Shown here piece after piece: positions 1-63,488 of a stretch of 64,000 nt of DNA. A program made the translations under genes and the position numbers. The DNA is taken from positions 124,001 through 188,000 of IMG/VR virus record IMGVR_UViG_3300034158_000023, one strand, 5' to 3'. How positions within the stretch are numbered: the stretch's first letter is position 1; every line of letters starts with the position of its first letter. The notes below the pieces were generated by a model that did not search any database, was not told the DNA's origin, and saw only the letters and a list, made by a program, of their open reading frames with translations.

Positions 1-819
1 GTACAGATGACTAGAAACTTTGGTTGTGCTGATAGACACATACGCGAATTCCAAATGAAGAACGAATTCTTGTTTAAGTTCTTCTCGTTGACCACGATGG
101 CTAAACATTATTTTGCGGCTAAGCACACCTGTGAAGGTATCGTGTATGACGTACCAGACTGGGAGATTAAAGGTTCTAACTTAAAGAACACGAAAGCTAC
201 AGCTGAGTTAATGGAAAGGTCTGATGGTCTCATTAAAGAAATAGCCCACAAAGTTATGGCTGGTGAGAAGATTCAACTGATTCCTATCCTTAAGGAGATT
301 GCAGATAAAGAAACTGAGATCATCAACAGTATCAGGTCAGGTAGTACAGAGTTCTTTGCTACAGGACAGATTAAAGACTTTAACAGTTATAAGCAGAAAG
401 AGAATGCTCCAGCTTGGCATAATTACTTACTGTGGTTAGAAGTCTTTGCTCCTAAGTATGGACAGACTCCTCCTCCAGCTTATACTGCTATTAAGGTTAA
501 CATCGAGTGTGATACTGGCGGTAAGATGAGAGCGTGGTTTGATGACATGCCTGATCAAGAGTTAGCTACTCGTTTCCGTGAGTTTATGCTTAGGTATAAG
601 AAAACTGCAATGACTGCGATTTGGTTACCTTCTGATCACGTTGGTGCTCACGGTATGCCAGATGAAATCATGATGGTTGTAAACGTACGTAAGATGATTA
701 TCGGAATGATGAAGAGCTACTACTTGATCTTAGAGTCTCTAGGGTTCCATATCCTTAACTCTAACGATACAAGATTGATCTCTGATGACTTAGCTGGGTT
801 TACTAAGAAAGCGGCATAA
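1..819 (+). CDS. C-terminal part of B-family DNA polymerase catalytic subunit (phiKZ gp50-like); 5'-truncated by window edge
   Basis: Frame is open to the window start (gta cag atg). Contains a K(H)Y...EIKG pattern resembling the PolB KxY/E-x-KG thumb region. Lies upstream of chimallin as in phiKZ. Confidence 0.7.
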   Translation, partial: VQMTRNFGCADRHIREFQMKNEFLFKFFSLTTMAKHYFAAKHTCEGIVYDVPDWEIKGSNLKNTKATAELMERSDGLIKEIAHKVMAGEKIQLIPILKEIADKETEIINSIRSGSTEFFATGQIKDFNSYKQKENAPAWHNYLLWLEVFAPKYGQTPPPAYTAIKVNIECDTGGKMRAWFDDMPDQELATRFREFMLRYKKTAMTAIWLPSDHVGAHGMPDEIMMVVNVRKMIIGMMKSYYLILESLGFHILNSNDTRLISDDLAGFTKKAA

Positions 820-841
820 AAGGAGCTCCTAGGAGCTCCTT
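820..841. terminator. Perfect 22-bp palindrome between convergent genes (bidirectional terminator)
   Basis: AAGGAGCTCCTAGGAGCTCCTT is its own reverse complement. The minus strand continues TTTATGCC. Confidence 0.75.
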
Positions 842-843
842 GT

Positions 844-1908
844 TTATGAAAACAATCTGTTGTAGATGAAGTCCATCTTCATGTTTACTAATGTAGATAG
901 GACAGAATCACTATACCAGTTCTCATTGTTTAGTCGTTTAAAGACACGCTCAAATTCTACTAAGTGTTTGGAGTTCTCTGGGTTAGGTTTACATGTCCCT
1001 AACAGAATCAGATAATCCATAGTAGTTAAGCAGGCCATTGCTTTACCTAACCTAGTCGGTGCAAAGTATGGAGTTTGTGCGTAAGCCAATCCAGTCGTGC
1101 CACTAGGTAAAGGTACAGAACTCAATACGTCTGCCCACTCGTAACTTTGCTCAGTGAACCTGTCTCGCATAGCTGTGAGAACGTCATGAGTAAAGGTCTC
1201 AGATGAGGATAAAGAAAATGGAATACGTTTTAAAGTATCAGCTGGTTTGGGATATGTACCTTCCAGTATTCTTGACAACCTGTTCAACCACGCTACGTCA
1301 TTGTGACTACGTATCATGTTTGGCAATACCCAGTTAGCTATAAACTGTCCAGTTGTTTGTGGGTTATCAGGATAAACTTTAAGTTGATACTGACGCCAGC
1401 AAATAAACATGTACATTAACATTGCTGCATCTATACCGATTACGGAGAAGCTCTCTTCGTTGGTATTAGGAACACCGTTCAACAAAGTGTAAGTGATGTC
1501 AGTTCTACCATGAGAGAAAACTTTTAATGGTTCTAACTCATACCAAGGTTTATTGCTAGTACGATCTAACTCTACGGAAAGTAATACTTCCTCGTAGCCA
1601 TAAAACCATCCTTTGCGAGCAAGTTTAGCGGAATGGATGGCTCCACCAATCTTAAGTGCGTTACATACGCTAGGAGATACGGAATCACAAATATCGAAGA
1701 ACCTTTCTTTATCACCTGACCATACCACGTTCATGGTGTTAATTAAAGTAACAAGAGGATGGTTAGATCGAACAGTCTCTCCACTAGCCCTATAATAGTC
1801 AATGGCTCGAATGGTGTTCTCGTTAATCCGTTTTTGCACATAAGACATTTTAGGAAACACTAGCGAGCGACGATTGGCATCTAGCTTAGTTTTAAATAGT
1901 TTAATCAC
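844..1908 (-). CDS. Conserved chimallivirus protein (phiKZ gp52-like, possibly virion-associated)
   Basis: 354-aa ORF with GTG start and GAGG SD. Syntenic position between DNA polymerase and chimallin, on the opposite strand. Confidence 0.55.
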   Translation of the reverse strand: MIKLFKTKLDANRRSLVFPKMSYVQKRINENTIRAIDYYRASGETVRSNHPLVTLINTMNVVWSGDKERFFDICDSVSPSVCNALKIGGAIHSAKLARKGWFYGYEEVLLSVELDRTSNKPWYELEPLKVFSHGRTDITYTLLNGVPNTNEESFSVIGIDAAMLMYMFICWRQYQLKVYPDNPQTTGQFIANWVLPNMIRSHNDVAWLNRLSRILEGTYPKPADTLKRIPFSLSSSETFTHDVLTAMRDRFTEQSYEWADVLSSVPLPSGTTGLAYAQTPYFAPTRLGKAMACLTTMDYLILLGTCKPNPENSKHLVEFERVFKRLNNENWYSDSVLSTLVNMKMDFIYNRLFS

Positions 1909-2068
1909 GCTAATGTCCTCGAGGTTTAATGAATCTACATACGATAGCTTTAACCTGTAATAATTTACACAGAGTATCTATTATATGTAACTAAACGAAT
2001 TTTATAATTCGTTATCTAATCCATATGCTGTTATGATCGAAAATTTACGTTTTCGAACTAATCGTGCG

Positions 2069-2133: not shown

Positions 2134-3972
2134 ATGCGTAACATGGCTTATAACGAAAAACCACAATCAAATTCTCACGCAACTGGTTACGGCGCACATG
2201 CACCTAAACCAAATGAAACTCCAGTTGGTGGTGGTAAATCTACTGCGCAAATGTTAAGTGGTATCTCTGCACCAATGGCCCACAATGGCAGCGGTGAAGC
2301 TCTTACCACAGTTTATGAAAACATGAAGTTGGTAATGGCTAAAGAAACTCAGCTGGCCAATTTTAAACTTCTGCCAATTGACGGCCAAGCTAATGGCTTG
2401 AACGTTAGTTCTGTTTTGATGTACGCTAAAAATCCACATGTCGATAACTCTTACGTGGTATACACGTTCCTGGTTGGCGCATCTGTTGGTGTCCTGCGTC
2501 CACGTGTCGCGAAGTTCCAAGAAGGTCAATACGACATTCCTGTTGTACTGTCTGACTTGTACGGTCCTACTTTACGTGAAGCCAACTTTGCAATCTTAGC
2601 CACTGCTATCGGTGCTAACGATGAAACTGCGATGACTGATGCGGGCGGTAATGCGTTCCCACGTAGTATGGCTCTGGATGACATGATCAGTTTCCGTACT
2701 TGTATCTATCATGGCGTTTACGCAATGAACAGTATCTTCGTAGACGATGCTGAAGAGCCACAAGTTTACGACCTGACTGACAAAGCAACAAACGTTTATT
2801 TCCATGGCGATCTAGACTTCCGTCCAGGTATTTTACAAAATGGCGCAGGTTCTCCTGTACGTCGTGATGTAACTATTGCAATCACTGCGGTAGATGGTGT
2901 AAACGGGCAAGACGTTGCTGACCAAACTTACGCAACAAGTCACTTACTGTCAAACTGTTCTGCTTATTTTGACATGGTGTTCACTGGTAAGAAACCACCA
3001 GTGCAAGCGTATTATGGCGGCCCAGTTGTAGAACCAACTCAGATGTTCACTCCTAAGTGCTGCATCGTTGACACTACAACAATGGCTGGTGTTACTCCAG
3101 AACTGCAAATCATGACTTTGGCATCAGCTACCAAGCTGTCAAGCGGTCAGTACACTCAGGCTTGGACTAACATGTTCAATCCAGCAGTAGGTGGCGCAAA
3201 CACCATGCATGACATCAGTGCCTTAGGTATTGAGTTAGGCTTCGGTGCTATCGATACCAATGCTCCTGATTGGAACCCACTTGAGTTCTGTAAGTTGTAT
3301 GTTGACGAACAGTTAGTTTACGCTCTACATGTTGAAGACGTGGGCGATTTAAGCTGGATGCACAAAATGCTGAAAGCTGCTGCGGAAAACAACACGCAAT
3401 CACGTCGCGATGATGCTAAAGCATACATCTGGGATGCCGCGGATAACTTGACTGGTAACAAAACTCTTAGCCAGTTTGTGAAGCCAACTGATGCGATCTG
3501 CTACATTGAAGATGACCGTATTTTCTTAGGTCACTACTTTGATAGCACTGGCGCTAAACGCGACCTGCGTGAAATCGATTACCTATATGCGTTAAAGCAT
3601 TTCGGTACCACTGATTTACCAATGGTAGTTGACTTCGGTTCTACGTTCAACCCAGAAACTGGTCCACTGGACTTACGTCTAGGTAAACGTAAACTGTTGA
3701 TCGAAGCTATGGTTTCTCAAAGCATCGTGATCGAAGGTTATGCAACACCACTGATTCTTGATCCAGTGTGGTTGACTGGCGTACAGAAAGCTATCGCAGC
3801 TGTTGGCGGCGAGCCTAAGTTCGAACACCTGTTACAAGGTCAACATACTCAACAACGCGAGTACAGTGCTCTGCGTCAATACGGTATGCAGGCGATTGCT
3901 CCAGTTGCTCAACAGTACGCTGCAAGCGGTTACTACGGCAATGGTTACTACGATCCACGCTTCGCTCGTTAA
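2134..3972 (+). CDS. chmA: Chimallin, major phage-nucleus shell protein (phiKZ gp54-like)
   Basis: 612 aa with highly expressed codon usage and a disordered N-terminus. Extended Gln/Tyr/Gly C-terminal segment. Immediately upstream of the nvRNAP beta' N-subunit, the invariant chmA position. Confidence 0.85.
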   Translation: MRNMAYNEKPQSNSHATGYGAHAPKPNETPVGGGKSTAQMLSGISAPMAHNGSGEALTTVYENMKLVMAKETQLANFKLLPIDGQANGLNVSSVLMYAKNPHVDNSYVVYTFLVGASVGVLRPRVAKFQEGQYDIPVVLSDLYGPTLREANFAILATAIGANDETAMTDAGGNAFPRSMALDDMISFRTCIYHGVYAMNSIFVDDAEEPQVYDLTDKATNVYFHGDLDFRPGILQNGAGSPVRRDVTIAITAVDGVNGQDVADQTYATSHLLSNCSAYFDMVFTGKKPPVQAYYGGPVVEPTQMFTPKCCIVDTTTMAGVTPELQIMTLASATKLSSGQYTQAWTNMFNPAVGGANTMHDISALGIELGFGAIDTNAPDWNPLEFCKLYVDEQLVYALHVEDVGDLSWMHKMLKAAAENNTQSRRDDAKAYIWDAADNLTGNKTLSQFVKPTDAICYIEDDRIFLGHYFDSTGAKRDLREIDYLYALKHFGTTDLPMVVDFGSTFNPETGPLDLRLGKRKLLIEAMVSQSIVIEGYATPLILDPVWLTGVQKAIAAVGGEPKFEHLLQGQHTQQREYSALRQYGMQAIAPVAQQYAASGYYGNGYYDPRFAR

Positions 3973-3986
3973 TTATTAAGTGTTAT

Positions 3987-4022
3987 AAAAAGAAGAGCTT
4001 TCGGGCTCTTCTTTTTTTGCCC
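3987..4022 (+). terminator. Intrinsic terminator after chmA
   Basis: AGAAGAGCT-TTCG-GGCTCTTCT followed by T-tract and GCCC. Confidence 0.85.
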
Positions 4023-4048
4023 AGTACATTACAATAAAAGGAAGCTGT

Positions 4049-5599: not shown

Positions 5600-6229
5600 A
5601 TGGCTAGACTAATTGTTGGCAACGACGCAGTATTTGAAGCAATGCGTCCGGTTAATTTCACTGCACAGTTGTATGACTTTGTAGCGGAACAACAACAACG
5701 GTACCATCAAGCATTTGGTAACGTGCAAAATGCGCTTACTGATAAAATCCATCATTGGCAACAAGCGTTTGTAGCAACTGATGCAGCTCGAGTAGCTGGT
5801 GCAATCATGCGACAAGCGGAATCGTATTTCAACCCTGAAGGTTTCCGGTATTTAACCAACATGTGGGATATACAGAATGCTCCAAGCGATATGATACGTG
5901 GTCTTATGGCAATGCCTGAGGCTCGGAATCTAGCTAACAAGCAAATGTGTAACGCGTATGAAGGTCAGTACTTCGATGCTTTCCCTGCTGCTACTCCACA
6001 AGAACATCGTGATTACAAACTGGTGTATGACGGTATAATTGTAGACTCCGAAGATGATGACATCGATTACACGATGGTGTTATACGGAGATGACTTGGTA
6101 GTTGATGATCCTTATCAGTATCTACAAGTCGAGCAGAAGTATAATGTTATTGAAGCTCGCTCTTTGATGTGTAAAGCTTTAGCTGAGGACATAGACTTTA
6201 CTGATCCTATGAACAATAAGTTAAGGTAA
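5600..6229 (+). CDS. Conserved hypothetical protein of the chimallivirus core block
   Basis: 209-aa ORF with GGAGG SD and good codon usage. Function not recognised. Confidence 0.6.
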   Translation: MARLIVGNDAVFEAMRPVNFTAQLYDFVAEQQQRYHQAFGNVQNALTDKIHHWQQAFVATDAARVAGAIMRQAESYFNPEGFRYLTNMWDIQNAPSDMIRGLMAMPEARNLANKQMCNAYEGQYFDAFPAATPQEHRDYKLVYDGIIVDSEDDDIDYTMVLYGDDLVVDDPYQYLQVEQKYNVIEARSLMCKALAEDIDFTDPMNNKLR

Positions 6230-6239
6230 AATGAAATGA

Positions 6240-6267
6240 GGGGAGTTTCGGCTCCCTTTATTTTTTT
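6240..6267 (+). terminator. Intrinsic terminator
   Basis: GGGAGT-TTCG-GCTCCC followed by TTTATTTTTTT. Confidence 0.75.
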
Positions 6268-6283
6268 ACATATCGGAGTTAGT

Positions 6284-6700
6284 ATGAGCGATGATAACAA
6301 AATATGGATGCCTACACTAACCGTCAAAGGGTGGCTTAAAAGCTTAGAGGAAGTAATAGATACAGCACTAGCACATATGTTTGTATCAGATTACTCGCAA
6401 TCAAACTCTCACTACGGTAAAGTTACTTCATTCAGTTGGTTGGTAGCTAAGTGGGGACACAACCCTGCTGATATGGCGTCTGAGACAGAGCACACGATCC
6501 GTACGTATTTGTCTAAGTATGCTGATAAGGTGGATGTAACTGTTACTTACACTTATCCTGACAACGCCCAGAGTAGTAAGACGTATGACTTACAGATTGC
6601 TCTGAAGGTTTACAAAGATGGTGTGGCGTATGCGTTAGCTGAAAAGTTAGAGATTATTGATAGTAAGTTCAAAAGAGTTGCGGAGGTAGCAAATGGCTGA
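6284..6700 (+). CDS. Conserved small protein, possibly T4 gp25-like baseplate/sheath-initiator fold
   Basis: Start moved from 6236 (which would overlap the terminator) to ATG 6284, preceded by GGAG. The beta-rich C-terminus (VDVTVTY...YDLQIALKV) loosely resembles gp25-type folds. Confidence 0.45.
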   Translation: MSDDNKIWMPTLTVKGWLKSLEEVIDTALAHMFVSDYSQSNSHYGKVTSFSWLVAKWGHNPADMASETEHTIRTYLSKYADKVDVTVTYTYPDNAQSSKTYDLQIALKVYKDGVAYALAEKLEIIDSKFKRVAEVANG

Positions 6701-9992: not shown

Positions 9993-10014
9993 TTAGTTAA
10001 GTAAAAGGCAAACG

Positions 10015-10036
10015 TGGGAGGGCTAACGCCCTCCCA
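10015..10036 (+). terminator. Hairpin terminator after chmC
   Basis: TGGGAGGGC-TAAC-GCCCTCCCA. No classical U-tract; followed by TCTATGTCG. Confidence 0.6.
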
Positions 10037-10057
10037 TCTATGTCGATCGAAATAAAA

Positions 10058-10076: not shown

Positions 10077-10106
10077 GTAGCGTAACCACAATAAAAGGTA
10101 ACAACA

Positions 10107-15128: not shown

Positions 15129-15165
15129 GGGGCAAAAAGAGAGAGCTTCGGCTCTCTCTTTTTTT
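15129..15165. terminator. Bidirectional terminator
   Basis: AAAAAGAGAGAGC-TTCG-GCTCTCTCTTTTT between convergent genes. Minus strand continues TTTTTGCCC. Confidence 0.88.
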
Positions 15166-19700: not shown

Positions 19701-21209
19701 ATGCCATGTTGTAAAATGGAAGTACTTACCCACGCATTTATTTTAACGGAGATTGACTCCAGGTTTAAATGGGTTATACACGCTTACGGTAAACGCTTTA
19801 TTGTAATGAAACGTGAGCGTGTAGGTCGTCAGATGATTGTGGTACCTGACAAAATGTATTGTTGGGCTAACGAATCTAGAACCGAGTTTAGGTTCCATCG
19901 TAATCAAAAGGATGAGTTTTTAGAGCACGCGGCTAGATGTGGGTTCAATGACATTCAGGTAACTGAGCGTCCCCTATATAAAGCTGCTAAAGTTAATGTG
20001 AGTTTGGTGGCAGCTTGGACACCTCGCCCTAACCAAGTGCCTATCATTGAGCATGTGTTAGCTCCTGGACACACTAAAGTTATTGCATTGCAGACAGGAC
20101 AAGGTAAAACTAGTACTAGTCTTAAATGTGGGGAATTAATAGGTGAAAGGATATTAGTATTAGCTTTAGGACGTTACCATGATAAATGGAAGTCTGACGT
20201 TATAAAGCAATACCGATTGAAGCCAGGGGAGATTATGACTGTTCGTGGTTCAGATCAGTTATACAACCTAATGCAAACGATAGACACTGACAAATGTATC
20301 CCTAGGGTAATCAACATCACCCTAGGTACGCTACGTGGATATATTGCGGAGTATAGTAGTCCTGGTCCTAAACCTGACTGGTTTGTTTCTCCTTGTAGGT
20401 TATGGGAGAAGTTAAAGATAGGCGTACGTATTACGGATGAAGTACATCAGCATTTCCACGCTAACTACATAATCGATTTGTTTACACACGTACCTAAAGC
20501 TATTTATCTGAGTGCTACGATAGAAACAGATAACCCTTTAACCAACGAGATGTCTAAGGTTAGTTTTCCTTTTAACACTCGTATGGGCGGTGGTGCATAC
20601 ATTAAGATTGCTAACGTTGTCTGTATCAGATACGCGTTAGAGAAGCGTGGTAGTATTCAATGTAGTGGGTTTGGTGGTAGTTATAACCACGGTAACTTTG
20701 AAACTAGTATGATGAAAAAGGAAAAGATCAAGCTGAACTATTTTGCTATGATTCTTACCTTGATCAATGAGTTTCATATACCCTACGCTAAACCTGGACA
20801 AAGGTTGCTAATCTTTGCTTACCGCGTAGATTTCTGCGTAGAGTTAGTAGAGTACCTGAAGATACATTTACCGCACCTAAAGATCTGTAAGTATACCTCA
20901 GATGATGCTACTGAGATTATCGAGCAACACGATGTCACAGTTACTACTTTAGGTTCTGCTGGTACAGCGCTAGATATAGATGGGTTATTGACATGTATGT
21001 TAACTATAGCTGTAGATAGCAGACAAGCAAACTTACAAGCATTGGGTAGACTAAGGGACATAATGTCTCCAGGACAAACTCCAATGTTCCTTTACTTGTG
21101 TTGTGAAGATATACCTAAACACGTGTCCTATCATCAAAGAAAAGAAACTGATATCTTTGCTGGGAAAACATTAAGCTACAGAACCATTAGTTACGCTAAC
21201 AAAATTTAG
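19701..21209 (+). CDS. Superfamily 2 helicase (phiKZ gp75-like)
   Basis: Walker A LQTGQGKT, DEVH, SAT and QALGRLR motifs. Confidence 0.9.
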   Translation: MPCCKMEVLTHAFILTEIDSRFKWVIHAYGKRFIVMKRERVGRQMIVVPDKMYCWANESRTEFRFHRNQKDEFLEHAARCGFNDIQVTERPLYKAAKVNVSLVAAWTPRPNQVPIIEHVLAPGHTKVIALQTGQGKTSTSLKCGELIGERILVLALGRYHDKWKSDVIKQYRLKPGEIMTVRGSDQLYNLMQTIDTDKCIPRVINITLGTLRGYIAEYSSPGPKPDWFVSPCRLWEKLKIGVRITDEVHQHFHANYIIDLFTHVPKAIYLSATIETDNPLTNEMSKVSFPFNTRMGGGAYIKIANVVCIRYALEKRGSIQCSGFGGSYNHGNFETSMMKKEKIKLNYFAMILTLINEFHIPYAKPGQRLLIFAYRVDFCVELVEYLKIHLPHLKICKYTSDDATEIIEQHDVTVTTLGSAGTALDIDGLLTCMLTIAVDSRQANLQALGRLRDIMSPGQTPMFLYLCCEDIPKHVSYHQRKETDIFAGKTLSYRTISYANKI

Positions 21210-21234
21210 GAGGCTTAGGCCTCCTTTTTTGCCC
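21208..21234 (+). terminator. Intrinsic terminator
   Basis: AGGAGGC-TTAG-GCCTCCT followed by TTTTTGCCC. Confidence 0.8.
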
Positions 21235-21255
21235 CTAAAATAAAAGGAATACAAA

Positions 21256-22038: not shown

Positions 22039-22045
22039 CGCCGTA

Positions 22046-22651: not shown

Positions 22652-22657
22652 CACAAA

Positions 22658-22694
22658 CGGCAAAAGAAGAGAGTTTTACCTCTCTTCTTTTTTT
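22658..22694. terminator. Bidirectional terminator
   Basis: AAAAGAAGAGAG...CTCTCTTCTTTT between convergent genes. Minus strand continues TTTTGCCG. Confidence 0.8.
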
Positions 22695-22705
22695 GTGGTT
22701 TTTAC

Positions 22706-23359: not shown

Positions 23360-23368
23360 TTCAATTCC

Positions 23369-24135: not shown

Positions 24136-24210
24136 TGGAACTTTAATGGCAGCGAATAATGTCTTCGCTACCTGACCCTCAGCAACATGACGTCCAAACT
24201 GTTGACTTCG

Positions 24211-26274: not shown

Positions 26275-26320
26275 ATGGTAAGTAGATTGAATAATTTATA
26301 ACACATTAAAGGAGTACCTC

Positions 26321-28455: not shown

Positions 28456-28458
28456 TCA

Positions 28459-28487
28459 GGGGAGGGGTAAAACCCTCCCTTATGCCC
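28459..28487 (+). terminator. Hairpin terminator followed by TATGCCC
   Basis: GGGGAGGG-GTAAAA-CCCTCCCT then TATGCCC. Confidence 0.7.
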
Positions 28488-28499
28488 AGTTAAATGGAG

Positions 28500-28511: not shown

Positions 28512-28714
28512 TATTTGTAACAAGCCGACATATAATACTTAAGACAAATCTTATTTTATTACACCTATCTTATTATATGTTTAAACGCCCTTGACGTTGC
28601 TCTGCACGCCCCTGGCGTCTATGCTGTTTATATATATAAGGAAATCTAAGAAAGTATAAGAAACACGTATAAACAGCATACACAGGAGAGGGTACAAAGC
28701 CCTCTCCGTATGCC
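28512..28714 (+). ncRNA. Candidate structured non-coding RNA (or DNA cis element)
   Basis: No credible + strand ORF. Three inverted-repeat stems (10, 5 and 13 bp) between a promoter motif and a terminator hairpin. Confidence 0.4.
28685..28714 (+). terminator. Hairpin terminator followed by GTATGCC
   Basis: GGAGAGGG-TACAAAG-CCCTCTCC then GTATGCC. Confidence 0.7.
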
Positions 28715-28740
28715 TATATAAAACCATAAAAGGAAAACCA

Positions 28741-30528: not shown

Positions 30529-30557
30529 GGGAGAGCTACGGCTCTCCCGTTATGCCG
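30529..30557 (+). terminator. Hairpin terminator followed by TTATGCCG
   Basis: GGGAGAGC-TACG-GCTCTCCC then GTTATGCCG. Confidence 0.75.
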
Positions 30558-30575
30558 TTTCGAAAATAACCTACG

Positions 30576-31413: not shown

Positions 31414-31441
31414 TATGTAGCGCTTAGCCGTTAATTATTGA

Positions 31442-31478
31442 CGGCATATGAGAGAGTGTCCCCACTCTCTCTTTTTTT
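31442..31478 (+). terminator. Intrinsic terminator
   Basis: CGGCATAT, then GAGAGAGTG-TCCC-CACTCTCTC and a T-tract. Confidence 0.8.
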
Positions 31479-32169: not shown

Positions 32170-32177
32170 GCACACCT

Positions 32178-32217
32178 GGCATAAAGGGAGAGTGTAAGCT
32201 CTCCCTTATTTTTTTTT
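32178..32217. terminator. Bidirectional terminator
   Basis: AAGGGAGAG-TGTAAG-CTCTCCCTT plus T-tract on +. TTTATGCC follows on -. Confidence 0.8.
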
Positions 32218-36816: not shown

Positions 36817-36870
36817 CATAACCTTGATCCATGGGTAGCGCCATGGATCATTTGCCTTAAGGAATTTATT

Positions 36871-38274: not shown

Positions 38275-38284
38275 ACAACATAGA

Positions 38285-38315
38285 AGAGGAGCTCCTAGGA
38301 GCTCCTCTATGCCGT
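38285..38315. terminator. Perfect 24-bp palindrome between convergent genes, followed by ATGCCG
   Basis: AGAGGAGCTCCTAGGAGCTCCTCT. Same 20-bp core as 821-840. Confidence 0.75.
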
Positions 38316-47723: not shown

Positions 47724-47746
47724 TCGCACTCGGGTATTGAAATGAG

Positions 47747-47776
47747 GAAGGGGGCTTCGGCTCCCTTCTTTTGCCG
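47747..47776 (+). terminator. Intrinsic terminator
   Basis: GAAGGGGGC-TTCG-GCTCCCTTC then TTTTGCCG. Confidence 0.85.
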
Positions 47777-47828
47777 TCAGTTATAAATTACCACAGAGCC
47801 TAATGGTGTAGGCAACTGAGGAGGCACT

Positions 47829-53402: not shown

Positions 53403-53409
53403 CATAAAC

Positions 53410-53440
53410 TGGGAGGACTGCTAGTCCTCCCATTATGCCG
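53410..53440 (+). terminator. Hairpin terminator followed by TTATGCCG
   Basis: TGGGAGGACT-GCT-AGTCCTCCCA then TTATGCCG. Confidence 0.75.
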
Positions 53441-53526
53441 TGACTGGAAAACTTTCTAAATATATATTGTTTTAGTAGTAAGAAAGCATAAAGCTTTCTA
53501 TTCATAAAACAATAAAGGGTATTACC

Positions 53527-54470: not shown

Positions 54471-54471
54471 A

Positions 54472-54522
54472 CGGCATAAAGAGAGAGCTTAGTGCTCTCT
54501 CTTATTTTTTTGTTTTATGCCG
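54472..54522. terminator. Bidirectional terminator flanked on both sides by CGGCATAA/TTATGCCG
   Basis: GAGAGAGC-TTAGT-GCTCTCTC with T-tract on +. TTTATGCCG follows on -. Confidence 0.82.
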
Positions 54523-56062
54523 CCATATCAAACCAGCTGTCATCACGATCGTCGTTTACGCTACGACCACCTGGCTTCTTAAGGGATAGATCTTCTCCTT
54601 TAAGATCATCTCGACAGCCCCCTGCATCAAAGAACGGCAGAACACAATAGAGATCTTTCTCTGGTGTCTGTGGCCCACTCTTACGATGCTTACCACGCTG
54701 TAGTGTAAGGTAACTTCGCCCATTAACTTTAACGATGTGGATAAGTATCTCAATGTCAACTTCTTGGTCGATCGTCTTACAGCTATCGTAATACCCTTTG
54801 TTGACGATTTCTTTTACAAAGTCGTCAGTACCATTACGCAACAGATATTTCGCCTCTGTTGAAATCTGATGCGGTGTAATGAAGGCTATCTTACGTGGGT
54901 TAGTAAAGTTACGTACACGACGGAACAAATCACGAGTATCTGAACCAGTTGGGCCTTGAGTACAACCTACCTTACTAAACATGTTCAGGTAGTCAACTGT
55001 GAGTAGATGGATTTCATAACCTTCTGACTCATAGAACATAATCAAGTTAAACAGTTTCTGATAGGTGAACTCAGACGGGTTAACACGCAACATCTTAAAC
55101 GCGTAACCATTGATACTAGTTTCTTCGTAAATGTACTTAGCGGCCTCCTCAGGAGTAACTGCGGTACAATCTGCCACCTCTCCTGTTCGGTTTTCTTTTA
55201 GGCTAGAATACGTTAACAGAATGTTATCTGTTAGTTGGTTCTCTGACGAGATGTGTAAGATAAGTGGTTTCTTATCTGGGTCTAACATATACGGTTTATT
55301 GTAAAGAGCTACCTGCTTAGTTAAGTTCAGAGTAAAACCAGTTTTATAGTTATGTTGTAGTGCACCAACAACCATAAAGTCACCACGACGAATACCAGCA
55401 TGTGATCCCAACATACGGTTCACAGCTTGATACCCAAACTGGAGCATACCTTCTAAACTCGTTTCATCTTGTGCTTCTTTAAAGAGGCCAGCTATTTCTT
55501 CCACATTAGAAAAGTCAACCTCGCCTAATACACCAGCCATACCCTTAGCACCTTGGGCATTACTTTCAACAGTGTACTTCTCAAGATTACTTTGCATCTC
55601 AGTAGCAAAGTTGGTTACATCGATTTGTTCTGTGGTGTATAAAGCACGTTGTACGCATGATCTAATGTAGGCTTGGAAATCTCGCTGTTTAATAAAGTTC
55701 TGTATGAGCTTTGAGTACTCAAGGATCTTTTTCTTAGTTAGTTCAGGAGAGATTTCATCACCAAGTGCATCTGTAATTGCTGTATAGATATGAGTATCAC
55801 TCATGCAGTTGATTTTAATTCTTTGCAATAGTGCTTGTTTATCTAATGGTTCCCCTTTGTCTAAGTCGCACATATGCAATACTGTATGACGTAGGCCGTA
55901 CAGTATTTCCTTATTGTCATCTGTCTCTAAAGTAGCCGCAGGCATTTCCATGGCCTCGACGATTTCTTTTATATGAGCTGAGCTATCGCCTGATTTACCT
56001 AGGGCCATGTTCTCCCAATATAGTAAAGTGATGGCATGCACTAATAATAATCTCGGTTCCAT
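54515..56062 (-). CDS. DnaB-like replicative helicase (phiKZ gp118-like)
   Basis: GIRRGDFMVVGALQHNYKT (variant Walker A), LLTVDYL (Walker B), PHQ and RGKHR. Confidence 0.9.
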   Translation of the reverse strand: MEPRLLLVHAITLLYWENMALGKSGDSSAHIKEIVEAMEMPAATLETDDNKEILYGLRHTVLHMCDLDKGEPLDKQALLQRIKINCMSDTHIYTAITDALGDEISPELTKKKILEYSKLIQNFIKQRDFQAYIRSCVQRALYTTEQIDVTNFATEMQSNLEKYTVESNAQGAKGMAGVLGEVDFSNVEEIAGLFKEAQDETSLEGMLQFGYQAVNRMLGSHAGIRRGDFMVVGALQHNYKTGFTLNLTKQVALYNKPYMLDPDKKPLILHISSENQLTDNILLTYSSLKENRTGEVADCTAVTPEEAAKYIYEETSINGYAFKMLRVNPSEFTYQKLFNLIMFYESEGYEIHLLTVDYLNMFSKVGCTQGPTGSDTRDLFRRVRNFTNPRKIAFITPHQISTEAKYLLRNGTDDFVKEIVNKGYYDSCKTIDQEVDIEILIHIVKVNGRSYLTLQRGKHRKSGPQTPEKDLYCVLPFFDAGGCRDDLKGEDLSLKKPGGRSVNDDRDDSWFDMAA

Positions 56063-56616: not shown

Positions 56617-56660
56617 TAATAGTGTGTAATTTAATTCTGACGACTCCATCGGTCGTATAG

Positions 56661-56664
56661 TATG
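56661..56664 (+). promoter_or_regulatory. Possible late (nvRNAP) promoter TATG upstream of MCP
   Basis: The phiKZ late consensus is TATG at the start site. The motif is short, so support is weak. Confidence 0.3.
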
Positions 56665-56721
56665 CAGTAGTGGCCTCGGCCGTTATTATATTCCTTAAGA
56701 TTAACCTTCCAGAGGTACGTT

Positions 56722-58887
56722 ATGTCCCATTTTACACGAGTAGATCAAAGTTCAGGTCTTGGTGCTCTGTACGCAACCATTAATGCAACTCTTTCTAAAC
56801 AAGCTGCGGTTGTTGCAAACGACGTTACTGCTAGAGCTGTAGCTGGTTTAGAGTCTGCTGCTATTGGCGCTCACCGCGACACTCACAAAAACATTGAGAA
56901 CATGCTGTCACAGTGTGTTACTAGCGTTCCAAGCGTCGCTGCCCCAACTTGCCACGGCTTAGAAGCTGCTGCAATCCTTGTAGCTGCATCAAGCAATCCA
57001 TCTGTTTATCACGACGCCGTACGTGGTGCACAAAACATCCACGCTAAACTGCGTGAGTTCGGTCCTTTAGGTAGCGGTAACGCAGGTGCTTTAAGCTACT
57101 CTACTGGTACTGAGTCATTTGATACTCAAGAACTAGCCAAGCACACTGTACAGTCAATCACTTACACGATTGATGCCGTTCGTCAAGATGCATTAGGTGA
57201 ATTGTTCTTCCCAACAATCGTAGCAACTCCAGACCAAGCTTTCTATAAAGCTTCTGTAGTTCGTCCTACGATCTTCCGCGGTATTACTCACAGTCGTGAT
57301 GGTAATCCGACCAAGTGGGAAAAGTACAACCTGTTAGACGCGTATCGTGATGCTTCTTTACTGAAGAACGATTCAACTCGTCTGATTCCATATGCTTCAT
57401 CTGAAGCAGTTGACAACTTAGCGCCTGTTTCTGAAATCGCTACAGTTAACGTTAAAGTCGGCGACTGGACTGTTCCATCACGTCCTCTGAAAATGGGTAA
57501 GAAGATTAACCTTATCGGTATCTCCATGCACCCAGATTTAGTAGCTAACGGTGTTTGTGATCAAACTGACCACATTGACCGCGCTGCACGTGTTGAAGCG
57601 TTGTATGTTAAAGTTACCAAAACTGGTAACGCTGCGCCAGCTGAGATCATCAAGTTCAACGTTTTAGGCATGCCATCAAGCAACTTCTACAAGACGCAAG
57701 AAGGTAAAGGCTACGACGCAATGCTCAAGATGACTCTGCGTTCATTGCGCCTTGACAAAAACACCAAGTCTATCTCTGGTGCAGTTCCAGCTATGTTAGC
57801 TGATTTCGTAGCAGCCAACTTAGCAGTTGACTTAGAAACTGTTGTTGACGGTGAATTGAACTTCGAACAAGGTACTGCAAACGTTCGCGGTAGCCACCTG
57901 ACTCCACGTGCAATTTACGACGTGTCTTCTGATCTGGCTACTCAGTTAACTACGCATGCTTCTTTGGAAAATTTAGTATTCGAACCAGTTTACTGGGACA
58001 TCGATGCTCACCTGACTAACACCAACCGTCGTACTCGCGGTACCATGTTAGACAATGACGTCTTCGAAGAAATTTACACCATCGGTTTGTTAGCTCCTAT
58101 CAGCGTACAGAAGCCAGTGCACCTTACTGACAAATCTGCTGTCACTGAAGTTGAAACAGATACTCTGGTTAAAGCTACTCACGTGATCATCAGTAACAGC
58201 GCTGTAACAACTCTGCTGAACTACTGTGAACATTTGAAATCTTTCTACCACAAAAATATCAATCACCTGCGTGCTGCATCTATCGACGGTGAAGGTATTG
58301 AAGGTATCGGTCGTTTATTGGTAACTCCATTCTACGCCGAAGCTGAAATCGACTTAGTTGAAGTAATCAACTCATTGACTTCAACTGATAAGATGAGCGA
58401 CTTACGTGGTTACTTCACTGGTTTCATCACTGAACTCGGTTACCGTATGGCTCAACGTTCTGGTTACTTGCCTGTGTTACGTCAGTACACTAACAACCCA
58501 GAAGCTACGCCTACACTACTGATCGGTACTGACCAAGTGTTGCCACAGTTCATGATGATCAATGGCGATCCACGTGCTGTCGGTCCTACTCTGAAGCATG
58601 AGATCGCATCAAGCCCAGATGACCGTATGGTTGGTGAAATCATCCTTAGCTTCGGCAAGGTAGATGACAAGAACTTCTGTCCTCTGAACTCTGGTAACAT
58701 GATCTGGATTCCAGAGTGGATTTCTACAATCCCAGTAAACCGCGGTGGCGCTACTGTGAATGAAACTTGCGTACAACCACGTTTCCGTCACGTGATCAAC
58801 TTACCAATCTTCGCACGTATCAAAGTTACTAACCTTGATAAGTACTTAGGTACTAAGATGAACATCGCTTACAAAGAAGTCGTTTAA
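56722..58887 (+). CDS. Major capsid protein (phiKZ gp120-like)
   Basis: 721 aa with extreme codon bias. Propeptide with GLE|S, GLE|A and GTE|S (E131). QDALGELFFPTIV and C-terminal QPRFRHVINLPIFARI typical of phiKZ-like MCPs. Confidence 0.92.
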   Translation: MSHFTRVDQSSGLGALYATINATLSKQAAVVANDVTARAVAGLESAAIGAHRDTHKNIENMLSQCVTSVPSVAAPTCHGLEAAAILVAASSNPSVYHDAVRGAQNIHAKLREFGPLGSGNAGALSYSTGTESFDTQELAKHTVQSITYTIDAVRQDALGELFFPTIVATPDQAFYKASVVRPTIFRGITHSRDGNPTKWEKYNLLDAYRDASLLKNDSTRLIPYASSEAVDNLAPVSEIATVNVKVGDWTVPSRPLKMGKKINLIGISMHPDLVANGVCDQTDHIDRAARVEALYVKVTKTGNAAPAEIIKFNVLGMPSSNFYKTQEGKGYDAMLKMTLRSLRLDKNTKSISGAVPAMLADFVAANLAVDLETVVDGELNFEQGTANVRGSHLTPRAIYDVSSDLATQLTTHASLENLVFEPVYWDIDAHLTNTNRRTRGTMLDNDVFEEIYTIGLLAPISVQKPVHLTDKSAVTEVETDTLVKATHVIISNSAVTTLLNYCEHLKSFYHKNINHLRAASIDGEGIEGIGRLLVTPFYAEAEIDLVEVINSLTSTDKMSDLRGYFTGFITELGYRMAQRSGYLPVLRQYTNNPEATPTLLIGTDQVLPQFMMINGDPRAVGPTLKHEIASSPDDRMVGEIILSFGKVDDKNFCPLNSGNMIWIPEWISTIPVNRGGATVNETCVQPRFRHVINLPIFARIKVTNLDKYLGTKMNIAYKEVV

Positions 58888-58906: not shown

Positions 58907-58940
58907 AAAAGAGAGGGGCTTCGGCTCCTCTCTTTTGTCC
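58907..58940 (+). terminator. Intrinsic terminator after MCP
   Basis: AAAAGAGAGGGGC-TTCG-GCTCCTCTCTTTT then GTCC. Confidence 0.88.
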
Positions 58941-58950
58941 CGAACTTATC

Positions 58951-61634: not shown

Positions 61635-61655
61635 ATAATAAAAGGTAAAAGTACG

Positions 61656-63446
61656 ATGAACAACACCGTGAATGAAACACTTTTGATGGAAATGATTTGG
61701 CGTGAGTTAGAAAGCTTACGTCGGGTTAGAGCCGTTAACGAATATAATTCGTTCTTAGCGTCTCAGCAGTATCGTGGTCCTATGGTTGATAAGTTGTTTA
61801 ATAACACCTGTGAGTATTTGTTAGCCATGGCTTCAGTAGAAGGTGTCCCACCTGATGCAGTTATGGAGCAAGCAGTGCGTGACTCTATACAAGCGCATGT
61901 TGCTCACTTCATTGAAAAACAACCGCAGCTTATTAACACATTTAGCCCTACTGAGATAGCAGGGTTAAAGAACTACGCTATGCGTAAAGTAATGATGGAT
62001 GATTTAATCGGTTCTGTTATGGAAATCGAAATCCAAAACGCTCCTGCTCCTGGGGAACGTGACTTGGGTAGTAAACGCCGTCGTCGCCAACGCGCAGGGT
62101 CTTCTGACCAACCAGCTACAACAAACGCCCCAGAAGATAGAAACGATTCTGGTCCCAGACGTCGCAAAGGTAGTAGAACAGAGTTAGAACGTGCTCCTAC
62201 TCCACCACCTAAGCGCGCTAGTATCCGGGAATCCATCACCCCCACGGGAGCTAAGCCGATGCCTGCCAAAGCACAACCACAAAAAGTAGTAGAGGCACCT
62301 GTAGAAAACATCATGAAAACGGGCGTTATTATCAAGCGCTTAGAAGGACAAGAAATGGACTACCACAAACACCAGTCAGTAAAGATCTTTGATACATCTA
62401 AACCTGCGCCAGACCGCCCTAAGAACTTTGAAGCTCAAGTTCGTATGGCTCCTTTGGTGCGTCCGGTGTTAGCTGAAACCTTCGATGAACCTGATACGAT
62501 CGAAGTGTTGGATGCTGGCTCATCGGAAACTGAGTATGAAGCGATCCCGTTACTGAAGAATCAATCTCCAATGATCTTTAGTGTTACAGCGGCATGTGTA
62601 GCAGCTCGTAGTGAGATCCGTAACTCTGAGTTTAACGTGCCTGGTCGTCAGACTGGTATTGTGGAATTTGAAGTTCTTACTCCAGTGCAATACTTCGAAG
62701 ATCCTACCAGTGCTAACATTGCAATGAATGAACATTATCTGTTCCCATTGCTTAACTACAAAGACCAAAACGAATTTGGTATTGTGGAATGGCATGCGCG
62801 TTTAGAACATGCTGTGGAAATGTCTGACTGTGCTATGGCTACTGCACTGTTAACTCAGTTAGACCGTTTAGCTACTGTAGAGTTTAACAACTTCCTCAAG
62901 TACACCTTAGGGTTACAATCATCGATTGATAGTTTCATTGAAGACTTCCATGACTTCTATGCAGCTGTATCGAAATCTATGACTGTGCCAGTATTAGATG
63001 CATTGTTAGGTGAAGCGGTAGAAGGTGTACGTAACAATGATGTAGCTGGTGCTATGTTAGTGAAACGTATTGCTGATGTCCGTATATTACCACAATCGCT
63101 TTTATCTTCAGGTGTAACTGATACACAAGGCGTGACGCTATGTATCGTGCAACCAGTTAGTGTAATGACGTTAGGTGCTAACTCTTCTGAGTTGCAGTTC
63201 GCTACAACGTCTAGTGATTACAACAGCATTACTGCTAAGTATGTAAAAGATGAGCCACATGTCATCTCTGGCCTCCTGCGTATGTTTACTGCTGCATTAC
63301 TAAGTCGTAAAGAAAGTAGTGTGTACCTATGTACCAACGACAATGACATTTTCCATATCCGTGATATGACGCGTATTGAAGATGGCACACCTGTGTTGCA
63401 TTTAGGTATTAAGTATCTTACTAACCCATTTACTTTGGGTCTGTAA
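61656..63446 (+). CDS. Conserved chimallivirus protein with Arg-rich disordered linker
   Basis: 596 aa with an AATAAAAGG leader. Core-genome position after the nvRNAP beta N-subunit. Confidence 0.6.
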   Translation: MNNTVNETLLMEMIWRELESLRRVRAVNEYNSFLASQQYRGPMVDKLFNNTCEYLLAMASVEGVPPDAVMEQAVRDSIQAHVAHFIEKQPQLINTFSPTEIAGLKNYAMRKVMMDDLIGSVMEIEIQNAPAPGERDLGSKRRRRQRAGSSDQPATTNAPEDRNDSGPRRRKGSRTELERAPTPPPKRASIRESITPTGAKPMPAKAQPQKVVEAPVENIMKTGVIIKRLEGQEMDYHKHQSVKIFDTSKPAPDRPKNFEAQVRMAPLVRPVLAETFDEPDTIEVLDAGSSETEYEAIPLLKNQSPMIFSVTAACVAARSEIRNSEFNVPGRQTGIVEFEVLTPVQYFEDPTSANIAMNEHYLFPLLNYKDQNEFGIVEWHARLEHAVEMSDCAMATALLTQLDRLATVEFNNFLKYTLGLQSSIDSFIEDFHDFYAAVSKSMTVPVLDALLGEAVEGVRNNDVAGAMLVKRIADVRILPQSLLSSGVTDTQGVTLCIVQPVSVMTLGANSSELQFATTSSDYNSITAKYVKDEPHVISGLLRMFTAALLSRKESSVYLCTNDNDIFHIRDMTRIEDGTPVLHLGIKYLTNPFTLGL

Positions 63447-63460
63447 GGTAGTTAGGAATT

Positions 63461-63488
63461 AGAGGGCTTCGGCCCTCTTTTTTTGCTG
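63461..63488 (+). terminator. Intrinsic terminator
   Basis: AGAGGGC-TTCG-GCCCTCT then TTTTTTGCTG. Confidence 0.85.

What the first reader, a model, noticed from the sequence alone, without database searches (positions are those of the whole stretch)
811..63488. Terminator hairpins carry a conserved 3' signature (T/A)TGCC(G/C) instead of, or after, the U-tract
Seen: directly 3' of many hairpins, in the direction of a terminating transcript, is TATGCC or TTTGCC. On +: 4015 (TTTTGCCC), 21227, 28481, 28709, 30550, 38308, 47769, 53433 and 53668. On -: 811-820, 15130, 22658, 31442, 32178 and 54472. Weaker variants occur at 10039 (TATGTCG), 58933 (TTTTGTCC) and 63481 (TTTTGCTG). Several of these hairpins have no U-tract at all. 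Two genes (polymerase and DnaB) even end in identical GCG GCA TAA codons, which form the complement of the motif. Inference: a phage-RNAP-specific termination or pausing signal, a 3'-end processing site or a protein-binding site. Because TATG is the phiKZ late start motif, it could instead be a re-initiation or antisense promoter.
Basis: partly seen in the sequence, partly recalled or inferred. Interest (0 to 1): 0.62.

Follow-up and report, generated by a model that had tools for sequence, protein, structure and literature searches.

The report
Conserved tail on jumbo-phage terminator hairpins
The GC-rich hairpins at gene ends of this uncultured nucleus-forming jumbo phage carry a fixed T(A/T)TGCCGT tail, which is this lineage's version of the conserved terminator motif already mapped by RNA 3'-end sequencing in phiKZ and 201phi2-1; the pattern is real but largely known.

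Summary
In the 215-kb genome, 31 of 55 strong intergenic hairpins carry [AT]TGCC within about 9 nt of the stem, always on one side only. Chance gives about 1% per flank (p~1e-35). The consensus is T-W-T-G-C-C-G-T-Y-W. The bare 6-mer is not enriched in bulk, so the signal is purely positional. The hairpins lie only in tandem or convergent gene gaps, never in divergent ones, so this is a gene-3'-end element.

The tail matches the phiKZ terminator motif (hairpin + TTATKYYGT; Putzeys 2024), which was also reported for 201phi2-1. I also found it in Xoo-sp14, Ea35-70 and RSF1, and weakly in Goslar. It is absent from PCH45, a Vibrio phage and PBS1.

Laying the published phiKZ coordinates on the phiKZ sequence puts RNA 3' ends inside the box, from TAT| to TATGYY|, always before the conserved GT. 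No phiKZ start site among about 119 read falls on a hairpin-abutting TATG. Here too, downstream genes have their own phiKZ-early-like promoter (ATATATTAYC), 15-30 nt past the box.

Best reading: intrinsic-type terminators whose U-tract is replaced by a conserved box. The promoter reading is disfavoured. There are no RNA data for this phage. It is a new member of a known kind, and why the tail is conserved remains open.

The parts
811..843 (-). Hairpin 818-843, then TTTTATGCCGC on the - strand (G at 815). It terminates the virion-protein gene 844-1908(-). The box complement forms the last codons and stop (GCG GCA TAA) of the DNA-polymerase ORF 1-819(+).
   Evidence: E 1e-8
3985..4023 (+). Hairpin with A/T extension, then a T-run and GCCCA (G at 4019), after the nuclear-shell-protein gene 2134-3972. 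U-tract subclass.
10005..10046 (.). One hairpin (10015-10036) with a box on both strands: + TCTATGTCGA (weak, G 10042) and - CGTTTGCCTTT (G 10009).
15129..15165 (-). Hairpin 15134-15165, then TTTTTGCCCC on the - strand (G 15133), in a convergent gap. The + side has a T-run.
   Evidence: E 3e-9
21208..21235 (+). Hairpin 21208-21225, then TTTTTTGCCCC (G 21231), in a tandem gap.
22657..22691 (-). Hairpin 22662-22691, then TTTTGCCGTTT on the - strand (G 22661), in a convergent gap. The + side has a T-run.
28458..28488 (+). Hairpin 28458-28481, then TTATGCCCA (G 28484).
28685..28715 (+). Hairpin 28685-28707, then GTATGCCTA (G 28711). An upstream GCATAC can pair with GTATGC and extend the stem.
30529..30558 (+). 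Hairpin 30529-30548, then GTTATGCCGT (G 30554). A separate early-like promoter (GGATATATCATCC) follows about 25 nt later, then the gene at 30622.
31441..31473 (-). Hairpin 31448-31473. The - strand has ATATGCCGTC (G 31445) and the + strand has a T7 run. It sits between two + genes, so the - strand box faces antisense transcription only.
32176..32207 (-). Hairpin 32184-32207, then TTTATGCCAG on the - strand (G 32180). It terminates the DNA-polymerase gene 32221-34068(-). The + side has a T9 run.
   Evidence: A related strain has a different hairpin plus TTTTTGCTGC here.
36825..36858 (+). Hairpin 36825-36850, then TTTGCCTT (G 36854).
   Evidence: E 0.17
38285..38315 (+). Hairpin 38285-38308, then ATGCCGTTT (G 38311), pointing into the convergent gene 38316-41213(-). 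The - side has the weaker TCTATGTTGTC.
47744..47777 (+). Hairpin (one mismatch), then TTTTGCCGTC (G 47773).
53408..53441 (+). Hairpin 53408-53434, then TTATGCCGTG (G 53437). Upstream CATAA pairs with TTATG.
54471..54503 (-). Hairpin 54479-54503, then TTTATGCCGTTT on the - strand (G 54475). It terminates the DnaB-like gene 54515-56062(-). The + side has a T-run, then a second TTATGCCGC (54515-54523) that is the complement of the DnaB stop region.
   Evidence: best hit, E 2e-10
58907..58941 (+). Hairpin, then TTTTGTCCC (weak variant, G 58937), after the major head gene 56722-58887. An early-like promoter (CATATATTATC) lies at 58956.
63461..63489 (+). Hairpin 63461-63478 (the same hairpin sequence occurs three times in the genome), then TTTTTTTGCTGT (weak variant, G 63485).

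Best explanation
**What they are.** These are the transcription terminators of a nucleus-forming (chimallin-encoding) jumbo phage that transcribes with its own multisubunit RNA polymerases. Each is an intrinsic-type terminator. It has a GC-rich stem-loop whose sequence varies by compensatory changes. The usual 7-9 nt U-tract is replaced by, or ends in, a conserved box T-(A/T)-T-G-C-C-G-T.

**Relation to known motifs.** The box is this lineage's version of the conserved terminator tail TTATKYYGT, described at experimentally mapped transcript 3' ends in phiKZ and reported to recur in 201phi2-1.

**How it most likely works (inferred).**
- By analogy with the phiKZ 3' ends, RNA should end inside the box, from ...UAU to ...UAUGCC. 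That is 6-10 nt after the GC-rich stem and just before the conserved G at +3.
- The stem-proximal UUAU would give the weak RNA:DNA hybrid that the hairpin disrupts.
- The two pyrimidine-then-G steps (TAT|G and CC|G) resemble the Y(-1)G(+1) elemental pause signal of multisubunit polymerases. They would hold the enzyme in the termination window.
- The downstream GT would act from the DNA or as the incoming nucleotide, not from the RNA.

**Extended stems.** An upstream CATA often pairs with TATG. This lengthens the stem and makes the element work, more weakly, on the opposite strand too.

**Status of each step.** Shown here: anatomy, statistics, gene context and family conservation. Taken from relatives: that 3' ends map in the box. 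Inferred: the pause mechanism.
For: **Enrichment and context.** The positional enrichment is p~1e-35, on one side only. Hairpins occur only in tandem or convergent gaps and never in divergent ones. The core box is co-oriented with the upstream gene in 14 of 17 tandem gaps, and it follows a - strand gene in 11 of 14 convergent gaps.

**Structure versus sequence.** The box consensus extends beyond what was imposed. Stems vary with compensatory changes at 6 of 7 pairs while the tail stays fixed.

**Host family.** The window encodes a nuclear shell protein, split RNA-polymerase beta-like proteins and a phiKZ-type major head protein.

**Published motifs.** The phiKZ terminator motif is hairpin + TTATKYYGT at 61 mapped terminators. 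201phi2-1 motif A (n=59) resembles it, and selected terminators work in a reporter trap.

**My survey of relatives.** Hairpin + TATGYYG is enriched in:
- phiKZ: 17 of 48 hairpins versus about 0.2 expected;
- Xoo-sp14: 6 of 25;
- Ea35-70: 5 of 14.

It is present in RSF1 and Goslar.

**phiKZ 3' ends.** The phiKZ 3'-end coordinates laid on the phiKZ sequence fall at -1, +1 or +2 from the G at 15 hairpin+TATG terminators. That is 4-8 nt after the stem.

**Separate promoters.** A separate promoter motif lies downstream of the box, as in phiKZ P017, P028 and P034.
Against: - There are no RNA data for this phage. The only runs holding it are contigs, probably DNA.
- The phiKZ 3' ends could be exonuclease-trimmed or processed ends rather than release sites.
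- The hairpin has the opposite polarity to phiKZ: purine-rich 5' arm here, pyrimidine-rich in phiKZ. The full phiKZ motif finds nothing in the window, and the exact tail pattern TTATKYYGT is not enriched in bulk.
- PCH45 and a Vibrio chimallivirus lack the box, so it is not required by all polymerases of this type.
- GCC at the RNA 3' end is a strong hybrid, which is unusual for intrinsic termination.
- The pause reading rests on general knowledge of bacterial RNA polymerase, not on a test.
Confidence: 0.8

Rival explanations
1. The TATG of the box is a phiKZ-type late promoter, with the start at the G. The polymerase would re-initiate right after the terminator hairpin, or would make antisense RNA in convergent gaps.
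For: [quoted passage not shown]
- About half of the tandem gaps here have no separate promoter between the box and the ribosome-binding site, for example genome 6128, 77788 and 84037.
- In phiKZ, two late starts (P049, P075) lie on a second TATG only 5-10 nt past a terminator hairpin.
Against: - 14 of 31 core boxes point into the end of a convergent gene, and none lies in a divergent gap where promoters are needed.
- 10 of 31 boxes have TTTG rather than TATG, and every TATG position matters for the phiKZ promoter.
- Hairpin-less TATGCCG copies look like background.
- Of about 119 phiKZ start sites read, none is on the G of a hairpin-abutting TATG. The next gene's start is 5-45 nt further on.
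- A candidate hairpin-free TATG lies upstream of the major head gene and is followed by CAG, not CCG.
Confidence: 0.08
2. The hairpin plus tail is mainly an RNA-level tag rather than a release signal. It could be a 3'-end processing or trimming stop, a stabiliser, or the binding site of a phage RNA-binding protein, for example for export of mRNA from the phage nucleus.
For: - Mapped phiKZ 3' ends retain UAUG(YY).
- CATA...TATG pairing would leave a long terminal hairpin with a 1-2 nt overhang.
- The box occurs in several nucleus-forming lineages and not in the non-nucleus phage PBS1.
- How mRNA leaves the phage nucleus is an open question.
Against: - The conserved G+3 and T+4 lie beyond the mapped RNA ends, so an RNA reader would not see them.
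- The nucleus-forming PCH45 and a Vibrio chimallivirus lack the box.
- The only known export-linked RNA binder, ChmC, binds near start codons with no motif detected.
- 201phi2-1 terminators stop transcription in uninfected cells.
Confidence: 0.1
3. It is a DNA-level element: a binding site for a dimeric phage protein on the CATA-hairpin-TATG pseudo-palindrome, or a mobile or recombinogenic terminator-promoter cassette.
For: - The flanks are pseudo-symmetric.
- Identical hairpins are reused at several loci.
- Hairpin-box-promoter cassettes recur.
- A related strain has a different hairpin at the same site.
Against: - The core box is strictly one-sided and oriented with the upstream gene.
- Stems vary by compensatory change, as expected for an RNA structure.
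- Cassette reuse is compatible with plain terminators.
Confidence: 0.02

Closest known systems
Conserved intrinsic-terminator motif of phiKZ (Putzeys et al. 2024, microLife, PMC10914365): 5'-BCCYCCCCHWWDGGGRRGGBYTTATKYYGT-3'
   Same: A GC-rich stem-loop at gene ends is followed by T-A-T-G/T-Y-Y-G-T in place of a long U-tract. Bidirectional copies occur in convergent gaps, and early promoters start right after the box.
   Different: - Here K is always G and YY is almost always CC (TATGCCGT). phiKZ mostly has TT, TC or CT.
- Here the 5' arm of the stem is purine-rich (GGGAGAG...CTCTCCC), the reverse of phiKZ (CCCTCCC...GGGAGGG).
- A third of the sites here keep a T-run before the GCC.
- The full phiKZ pattern finds no match in the window.
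Terminator motifs A and A/B of Pseudomonas phage 201phi2-1 (PMC11512511)
   Same: Motif A is reported to resemble the phiKZ motif. Motif B upstream lengthens the stem, which corresponds to the CATA...TATG pairing seen here. Terminators of this phage work in a reporter trap.
   Different: I did not see the logos or tables (no supplements are held), so the match is taken from the authors' statement. The host and genome are only distantly related.
Canonical bacterial intrinsic (Rho-independent) terminator
   Same: A GC-rich hairpin is followed by a weak, U-rich hybrid. The predicted release window is 6-10 nt after the stem. A-tract/U-tract bidirectional forms occur in convergent gaps.
   Different: Two thirds of the sites have only UUAU or UAU instead of a 7-9 nt U-tract and are missed by a hairpin-plus-T-run scan. 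A sequence-specific GCCGT follows, which ordinary terminators lack.
[quoted passage not shown]
   Same: The same four bases, in the same phage family.
   Different: The location, orientation and start-site data in phiKZ do not fit promoter use of the box. TTTG variants are tolerated here, but the promoter does not tolerate substitutions.
Elemental pause consensus G(-10)Y(-1)G(+1) of bacterial RNA polymerase, and the sequence-specific class II pause/termination signal of T7 RNA polymerase (from my own knowledge, not checked here)
   Same: A short DNA-encoded signal with a pyrimidine at the RNA 3' end and G as the next base halts the enzyme. The box offers two such steps at the mapped 3' ends.
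   Different: No test here shows pausing. The T7 signal needs no hairpin and belongs to a single-subunit enzyme.

Membership tests
phiKZ-type conserved terminator (Putzeys 2024) | Tail TTAT-K-YY-GT directly after the stem | tested here: met
   The consensus of the 31 core sites is T-W-T-G-C-C-G-T-Y-W. TATGYYG follows 19 of 61 strong hairpins versus 0.2 expected. A is replaced by T in 10 of 31 sites.
phiKZ-type conserved terminator (Putzeys 2024) | Stem-loop CCYCCCC-HWWD-GGGRRGG (pyrimidine-rich 5' arm) | tested here: not met
   The stems here are GGGAGRG...CYCTCCC, the opposite polarity. The full IUPAC motif with up to 3 mismatches gives 0 hits. A GC-rich stem with a tetraloop is present all the same.
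phiKZ-type conserved terminator (Putzeys 2024) | Transcript 3' ends map at the element | not testable with these tools
   No RNA run holds this phage. The runs laid are contigs, probably DNA. In phiKZ the ends fall at -1 to +2 from the G.
phiKZ-type conserved terminator (Putzeys 2024) | Host genome is a phiKZ-like (Chimalliviridae) phage with its own multisubunit RNA polymerases | tested here: met
   An RNA-polymerase beta-like ORF is 30-35% identical to chimallivirus proteins. The nuclear shell protein, major head protein and DnaB-like PHROG families match.
Canonical intrinsic terminator | GC-rich hairpin just downstream of a gene, in the gene's orientation | tested here: met
   Hairpins lie 0-140 nt (mostly <25 nt) after stop codons, only in tandem or convergent gaps.
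Canonical intrinsic terminator | U-tract of about 7-9 nt after the stem | tested here: not met
   21 of 31 core sites have TAT before the G and at most 3-4 T. The generic scan misses them. 10 of 31 do have a T-run.
phiKZ late promoter | TATG with transcription starting at the G | not testable with these tools
   The sequence is present at 21 of 31 sites, but there are no 5'-end data for this phage. In phiKZ, none of about 119 start sites read is on a hairpin-abutting TATG.
phiKZ late promoter | Lies upstream of, and co-oriented with, the gene it drives; independent of a hairpin | tested here: not met
   14 of 31 point into convergent genes, none lies in a divergent gap, and hairpin-less copies are background.
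N4-type hairpin promoter (virion RNA polymerase) | DNA hairpin with a 5-7 bp stem and 3-nt loop upstream of early genes, read by a single-subunit giant polymerase | tested here: not met
   Stems are 7-13 bp with mostly 4-nt loops and lie at gene 3' ends. The polymerases here are multisubunit beta/beta'-like. The family definition is from my own knowledge.

The most novel reading that the evidence does not exclude
The same four bases, TATG, could serve these sigma-less phage polymerases as both start and stop signal. At promoters, the beta-lobe pocket of the non-virion polymerase captures non-template TATG with G at +1. During elongation, the same capture just after a hairpin would arrest the enzyme and trigger release. 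In compact tandem junctions it might let the enzyme restart on the spot, a stop-start gene junction like those of negative-strand RNA viruses. The evidence does not exclude this for the TATG subclass. It is weakened by the TTTG variants, by phiKZ tails with T in place of G, and by the lack of start sites on the box in phiKZ.
Probability: 0.1. Interest if true: 0.7.

Novelty: new member of a known kind. Interest (0 to 1): 0.3.

Why it matters
How the sigma-less multisubunit RNA polymerases of nucleus-forming jumbo phages terminate is not understood. A 2025 review of these phages does not mention termination at all.

A phage only about 30% identical in its polymerase keeps the same T-A-T-G-Y-Y-G-T tail, despite a different GC content and an inverted stem polarity. 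The tail also recurs in Xanthomonas, Erwinia and Ralstonia phages but not in PCH45 or a Vibrio phage. This suggests the tail is selected by conserved phage machinery and is not an accident of phiKZ.

This gives three practical gains:
- a rule for annotating transcription units in uncultured chimalliviruses;
- a set of natural variants (GCC versus GTT, TAT versus TTT, with or without CATA pairing) for termination assays;
- a defined question: whether the non-transcribed GT acts through the DNA.

As a discovery it is modest, because the motif is already published.

Tried and rejected
**Searches that gave nothing.**
- Close relatives for orthologous-site covariation: the search for related loci in viral contigs (two queries) and metagenome contigs found none. 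Megablast against phages found nothing.
- RNA evidence: the look-up of sequencing runs gave no RNA holder. Read laying was run on 5,001 letters, and returned only contigs, probably DNA. Their breaks at hairpins are assembly effects, so nothing can be said about transcript ends.
- Rfam: no family in the window.
- Supplements of the two PMC papers are not held. I used the bioRxiv supplement of the phiKZ paper instead. Its printed sequences have dropped letters, so I used only the coordinates, laid on the GenBank sequence.

**Patterns that failed in bulk.**
- The exact phiKZ patterns are not enriched, or are absent, in bulk.
- The bare 6-mer is not enriched.

**Ideas rejected or left unsupported.**
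- Chance: p~1e-35.
- Mobile repeat: stems differ by compensatory changes.
- N4-like hairpin promoter: wrong place and wrong polymerase.
- An mRNA-export tag bound by ChmC: the ChmC paper reports no motif and binding near start codons, so the idea is unsupported but not excluded.

Full report
**Where the window lies.** The window is bases 124,001-188,000 of a single 215,386-bp contig with 41.4% GC. Its ends share an exact 127-nt overlap. A beta-like RNA-polymerase ORF (15554-17647) is only 30-35% identical to proteins of phiKZ-like jumbo phages, with Xanthomonas phage Xoo-sp14 the best match. PHROG scans name four landmarks:
- a nuclear shell protein (2134-3972);
- a phiKZ-type major head protein (56722-58887);
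- a DnaB-like helicase (54515-56062, - strand);
- two DNA-polymerase pieces (1-819 on +, and 32221-34068 on -).

The genome is therefore an uncultured nucleus-forming chimallivirus. It was assembled from a peat metagenome, and near-identical DNA occurs in biofilm, wastewater and freshwater runs.

**Checking the observation.** The site at 53668 is the exception. Its TTTTTTGCCGG lies about 12 nt beyond an imperfect hairpin and overlaps the ribosome-binding site of the next gene. A covariance model built from the other sites does not find it.

That model, run without filters over both strands of the window, recovers 18 of its 19 training sites at E<=2e-4. The atypical 36854 site scores only E 0.17. 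Beyond the training sites it finds only opposite-strand echoes and one weak extra hit at 6226-6271.

**Statistics.**
- Genome-wide there are 92 hairpins with dG<=-10, and 55 of them are intergenic by a crude gene call.
- Of the 55 intergenic hairpins, 31 carry [AT]TGCC within about 9 nt of the stem end, on one side and never both. Only 1 of the 37 hairpins inside genes does.
- The chance rate is 1.0% per 11-nt window, so the binomial p is about 1.5e-35.
- TATGCCGT occurs 25 times. 18 copies lie in the 5% of the genome that is intergenic, and 17 directly follow a hairpin.
- Aligned on the G, T at -3 is invariant (31/31) although I did not impose it. After GCC come G (21/31), T (22/31), Y (26/31) and W (31/31). 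The box is T-W-T-G-C-C-G-T-Y-W.

The bare 6-mer is not enriched in bulk (71 versus 63+-7). The signal is its position next to hairpins. Hairpin-less TATGCCG copies are scattered through genes, like background.

**Anatomy and context.**
- Stems differ from site to site by compensatory changes (6 of 7 consensus pairs), while the tail stays fixed.
- All stems have a purine-rich 5' arm and a pyrimidine-rich 3' arm. This reads the same on both strands.
- Hairpins occur only between tandem or convergent genes, never between divergent ones.
- In tandem gaps the core box is on the gene strand 14 times and on the other strand 3 times.
- In convergent gaps it follows the - strand gene 11 times and the + strand gene 3 times. 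The other side then usually has a plain T-run or a weaker TATGYYG.
- An upstream CATA often pairs with TATG, extending the stem.
- Two thirds of the sites have no real U-tract, and a generic hairpin-plus-T-run scan misses them.

This is the layout of a terminator, not of a promoter.

**What is already known.** Putzeys et al. (2024) mapped transcript ends in phiKZ by ONT-cappable-seq. They reported that 61 intrinsic terminators share the motif BCCYCCCCHWWDGGGRRGGBYTTATKYYGT, a stem-loop followed by TTAT and KYYGT. A second study found a motif in 201phi2-1 (n=59) that its authors say strongly resembles it. An upstream motif there lengthens the stem. Eight selected terminators also stopped host RNA polymerase in a reporter trap. 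The tail found here, TTATGCCGT, is a perfect instance of TTATKYYGT.

**My own survey of relatives.** I took 30-50 kb from each of ten jumbo phages, and 100 kb from phiKZ.
- Hairpin + TATGYYG is strongly enriched in phiKZ (17 of 48 strong hairpins, about 0.2 expected), Xoo-sp14 (6 of 25) and Ea35-70 (5 of 14).
- It is present in RSF1 and Goslar.
- EL and OBP have TATG with a different continuation.
- PCH45 uses plain T-runs.
- A Vibrio chimallivirus and the non-nucleus Bacillus phage PBS1 lack the motif.

The box is thus widespread in the family but not universal. In phiKZ the full motif has the opposite stem polarity, and the full phiKZ pattern finds nothing in this window.

**Where the RNA ends, and where the next RNA starts, in phiKZ.** The bioRxiv supplement of the phiKZ paper lists the coordinates. 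I laid them on the GenBank sequence, because the printed sequences have dropped letters.
- At 15 terminators with hairpin + TATG, the called 3' end is the U before the G (4 cases), the base after the G (6) or the second base after it (5). It is always before the conserved GT and lies 4-8 nt after the GC-rich stem.
- So the box sits where a U-tract would. Its first half is transcribed, and its GT lies just beyond the RNA.
- Of about 119 start sites read (P008-P126), none is on the G of a TATG that abuts a terminator hairpin.
- Downstream genes start 5-45 nt further on, at their own late, middle or early promoters. Several early promoters begin right after the box.

**The same holds in this genome.** Many gaps read: stop codon, hairpin, TATGCCGT, 15-30 nt, ATATATTAYC, about 35 nt, ATAAAAGGA, ATG. 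The motif [ACT]ATATAT[TC]A[TC][CT] resembles the phiKZ early promoter. It has 21 copies, of which 16 are intergenic, all on the + strand and 27-75 nt before a start codon in 14 of them. The box is therefore separate from the promoter of the next gene.

**Mechanism.** I commit to the following account.
- These are intrinsic-type terminators of the phage's multisubunit polymerases.
- UUAU next to the stem provides the weak hybrid.
- Release occurs in the window 6-10 nt after the stem, which here ends at CC|G.
- The two pyrimidine-G steps resemble the elemental pause signal of multisubunit polymerases. This comparison comes from my own knowledge, not from a test.
- The conserved GT would act through the DNA or as the incoming nucleotide.

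The first point is well supported by relatives. The remaining points are inference. Against it: there are no RNA data for this phage, the phiKZ ends might be trimmed, and GCC makes a strong hybrid end.

**Rivals.**
- Promoter or restart at the box G is disfavoured by orientation, by the TTTG variants, by the background behaviour of hairpin-less copies and by the phiKZ start sites. About half the tandem gaps lack a separate promoter, however, and two phiKZ late starts lie on a second TATG 5-10 nt past a hairpin, so a minor dual role is not excluded.
- An RNA tag for stability, processing or export is not excluded. It would not explain conservation beyond the RNA end, and the known export-linked binder ChmC shows no motif.
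- A DNA-binding site or mobile cassette is unlikely.

**Verdict.** The pattern is real and highly non-random. It is this lineage's version of a terminator motif published for phiKZ and 201phi2-1, so it is a new member of a known kind. What remains interesting is that the tail is kept across very distant family members, and that its role, and any link to the identical late-promoter tetranucleotide, is still unexplained.

Noticed in passing
window 2069, 10063, 15516, 28501, 58956 (+); 21 copies in the genome: A candidate promoter motif [ACT]ATATAT[TC]A[TC][CT] resembles the phiKZ early promoter TATATTAC. 16 of its 21 copies are intergenic, all on the + strand and mostly 27-75 nt before a start codon. 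It often lies 15-30 nt after a terminator box, forming terminator-promoter cassettes.
   Followed up: partly
upstream of many genes, e.g. window 4030-4048, 10090-10106, 30605-30621: A very uniform ribosome-binding region, ATAAAAGGA. AAAGGA lies within 22 nt of 44 of 214 crude gene starts.
   Followed up: partly
window 20000-39999: Sigma-70-like promoter matches are fewer than in shuffles (33 versus 47+-6). This fits a phage that does not rely on host RNA polymerase.
   Followed up: no
genome ends (outside the window): bases 1-127 and 215260-215386: An exact 127-nt overlap joins the two contig ends. It indicates a circular assembly or terminal redundancy, and it includes a hairpin plus T-run.
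   Followed up: partly
window 63461-63478 and genome 82399, 106838; window 38285-38308 and genome 30144: Identical terminator hairpins are reused at distant loci: AGAGGGCTTCGGCCCTCT three times and AGAGGAGCTCCTAGGAGCTCCTCT twice. This could reflect duplication, recombination between cassettes or convergence.
   Followed up: partly
window 32184-32220, 29791-29896, 28751, 29150: A strain about 97% identical, in wastewater runs X4 and X5, differs at several points. After the polymerase gene it has a different hairpin followed by TTTTTGCTGC. A 104-nt stretch is replaced by 29 other letters. It also has in-frame deletions of 6 and 15 nt.
   Followed up: partly
window 31441-31473 (-) and 10005-10036 (-); genome 68085 (-): Three core boxes lie on the strand opposite to both flanking genes, so they could only stop antisense or read-through transcription from further away.
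   Followed up: no
window 56660-56680: A hairpin-free TATAGTATGCAG lies about 57 nt upstream of the major head gene. It is a candidate phiKZ-type late promoter (compare phiKZ P119L ...TTGCTATG).
   Followed up: no
window 1-819 (+) and 32221-34068 (-): Two separate DNA-polymerase ORFs (PHROG 2927 C-terminal part and PHROG 3011) lie on opposite strands. phiKZ-like genomes are annotated the same way.
   Followed up: no
window 6226-6271: A weak match to the terminator model on both strands (E 0.02-0.09), between the tandem genes 5600-6229 and 6236-6700. It may be a degenerate member.
   Followed up: no
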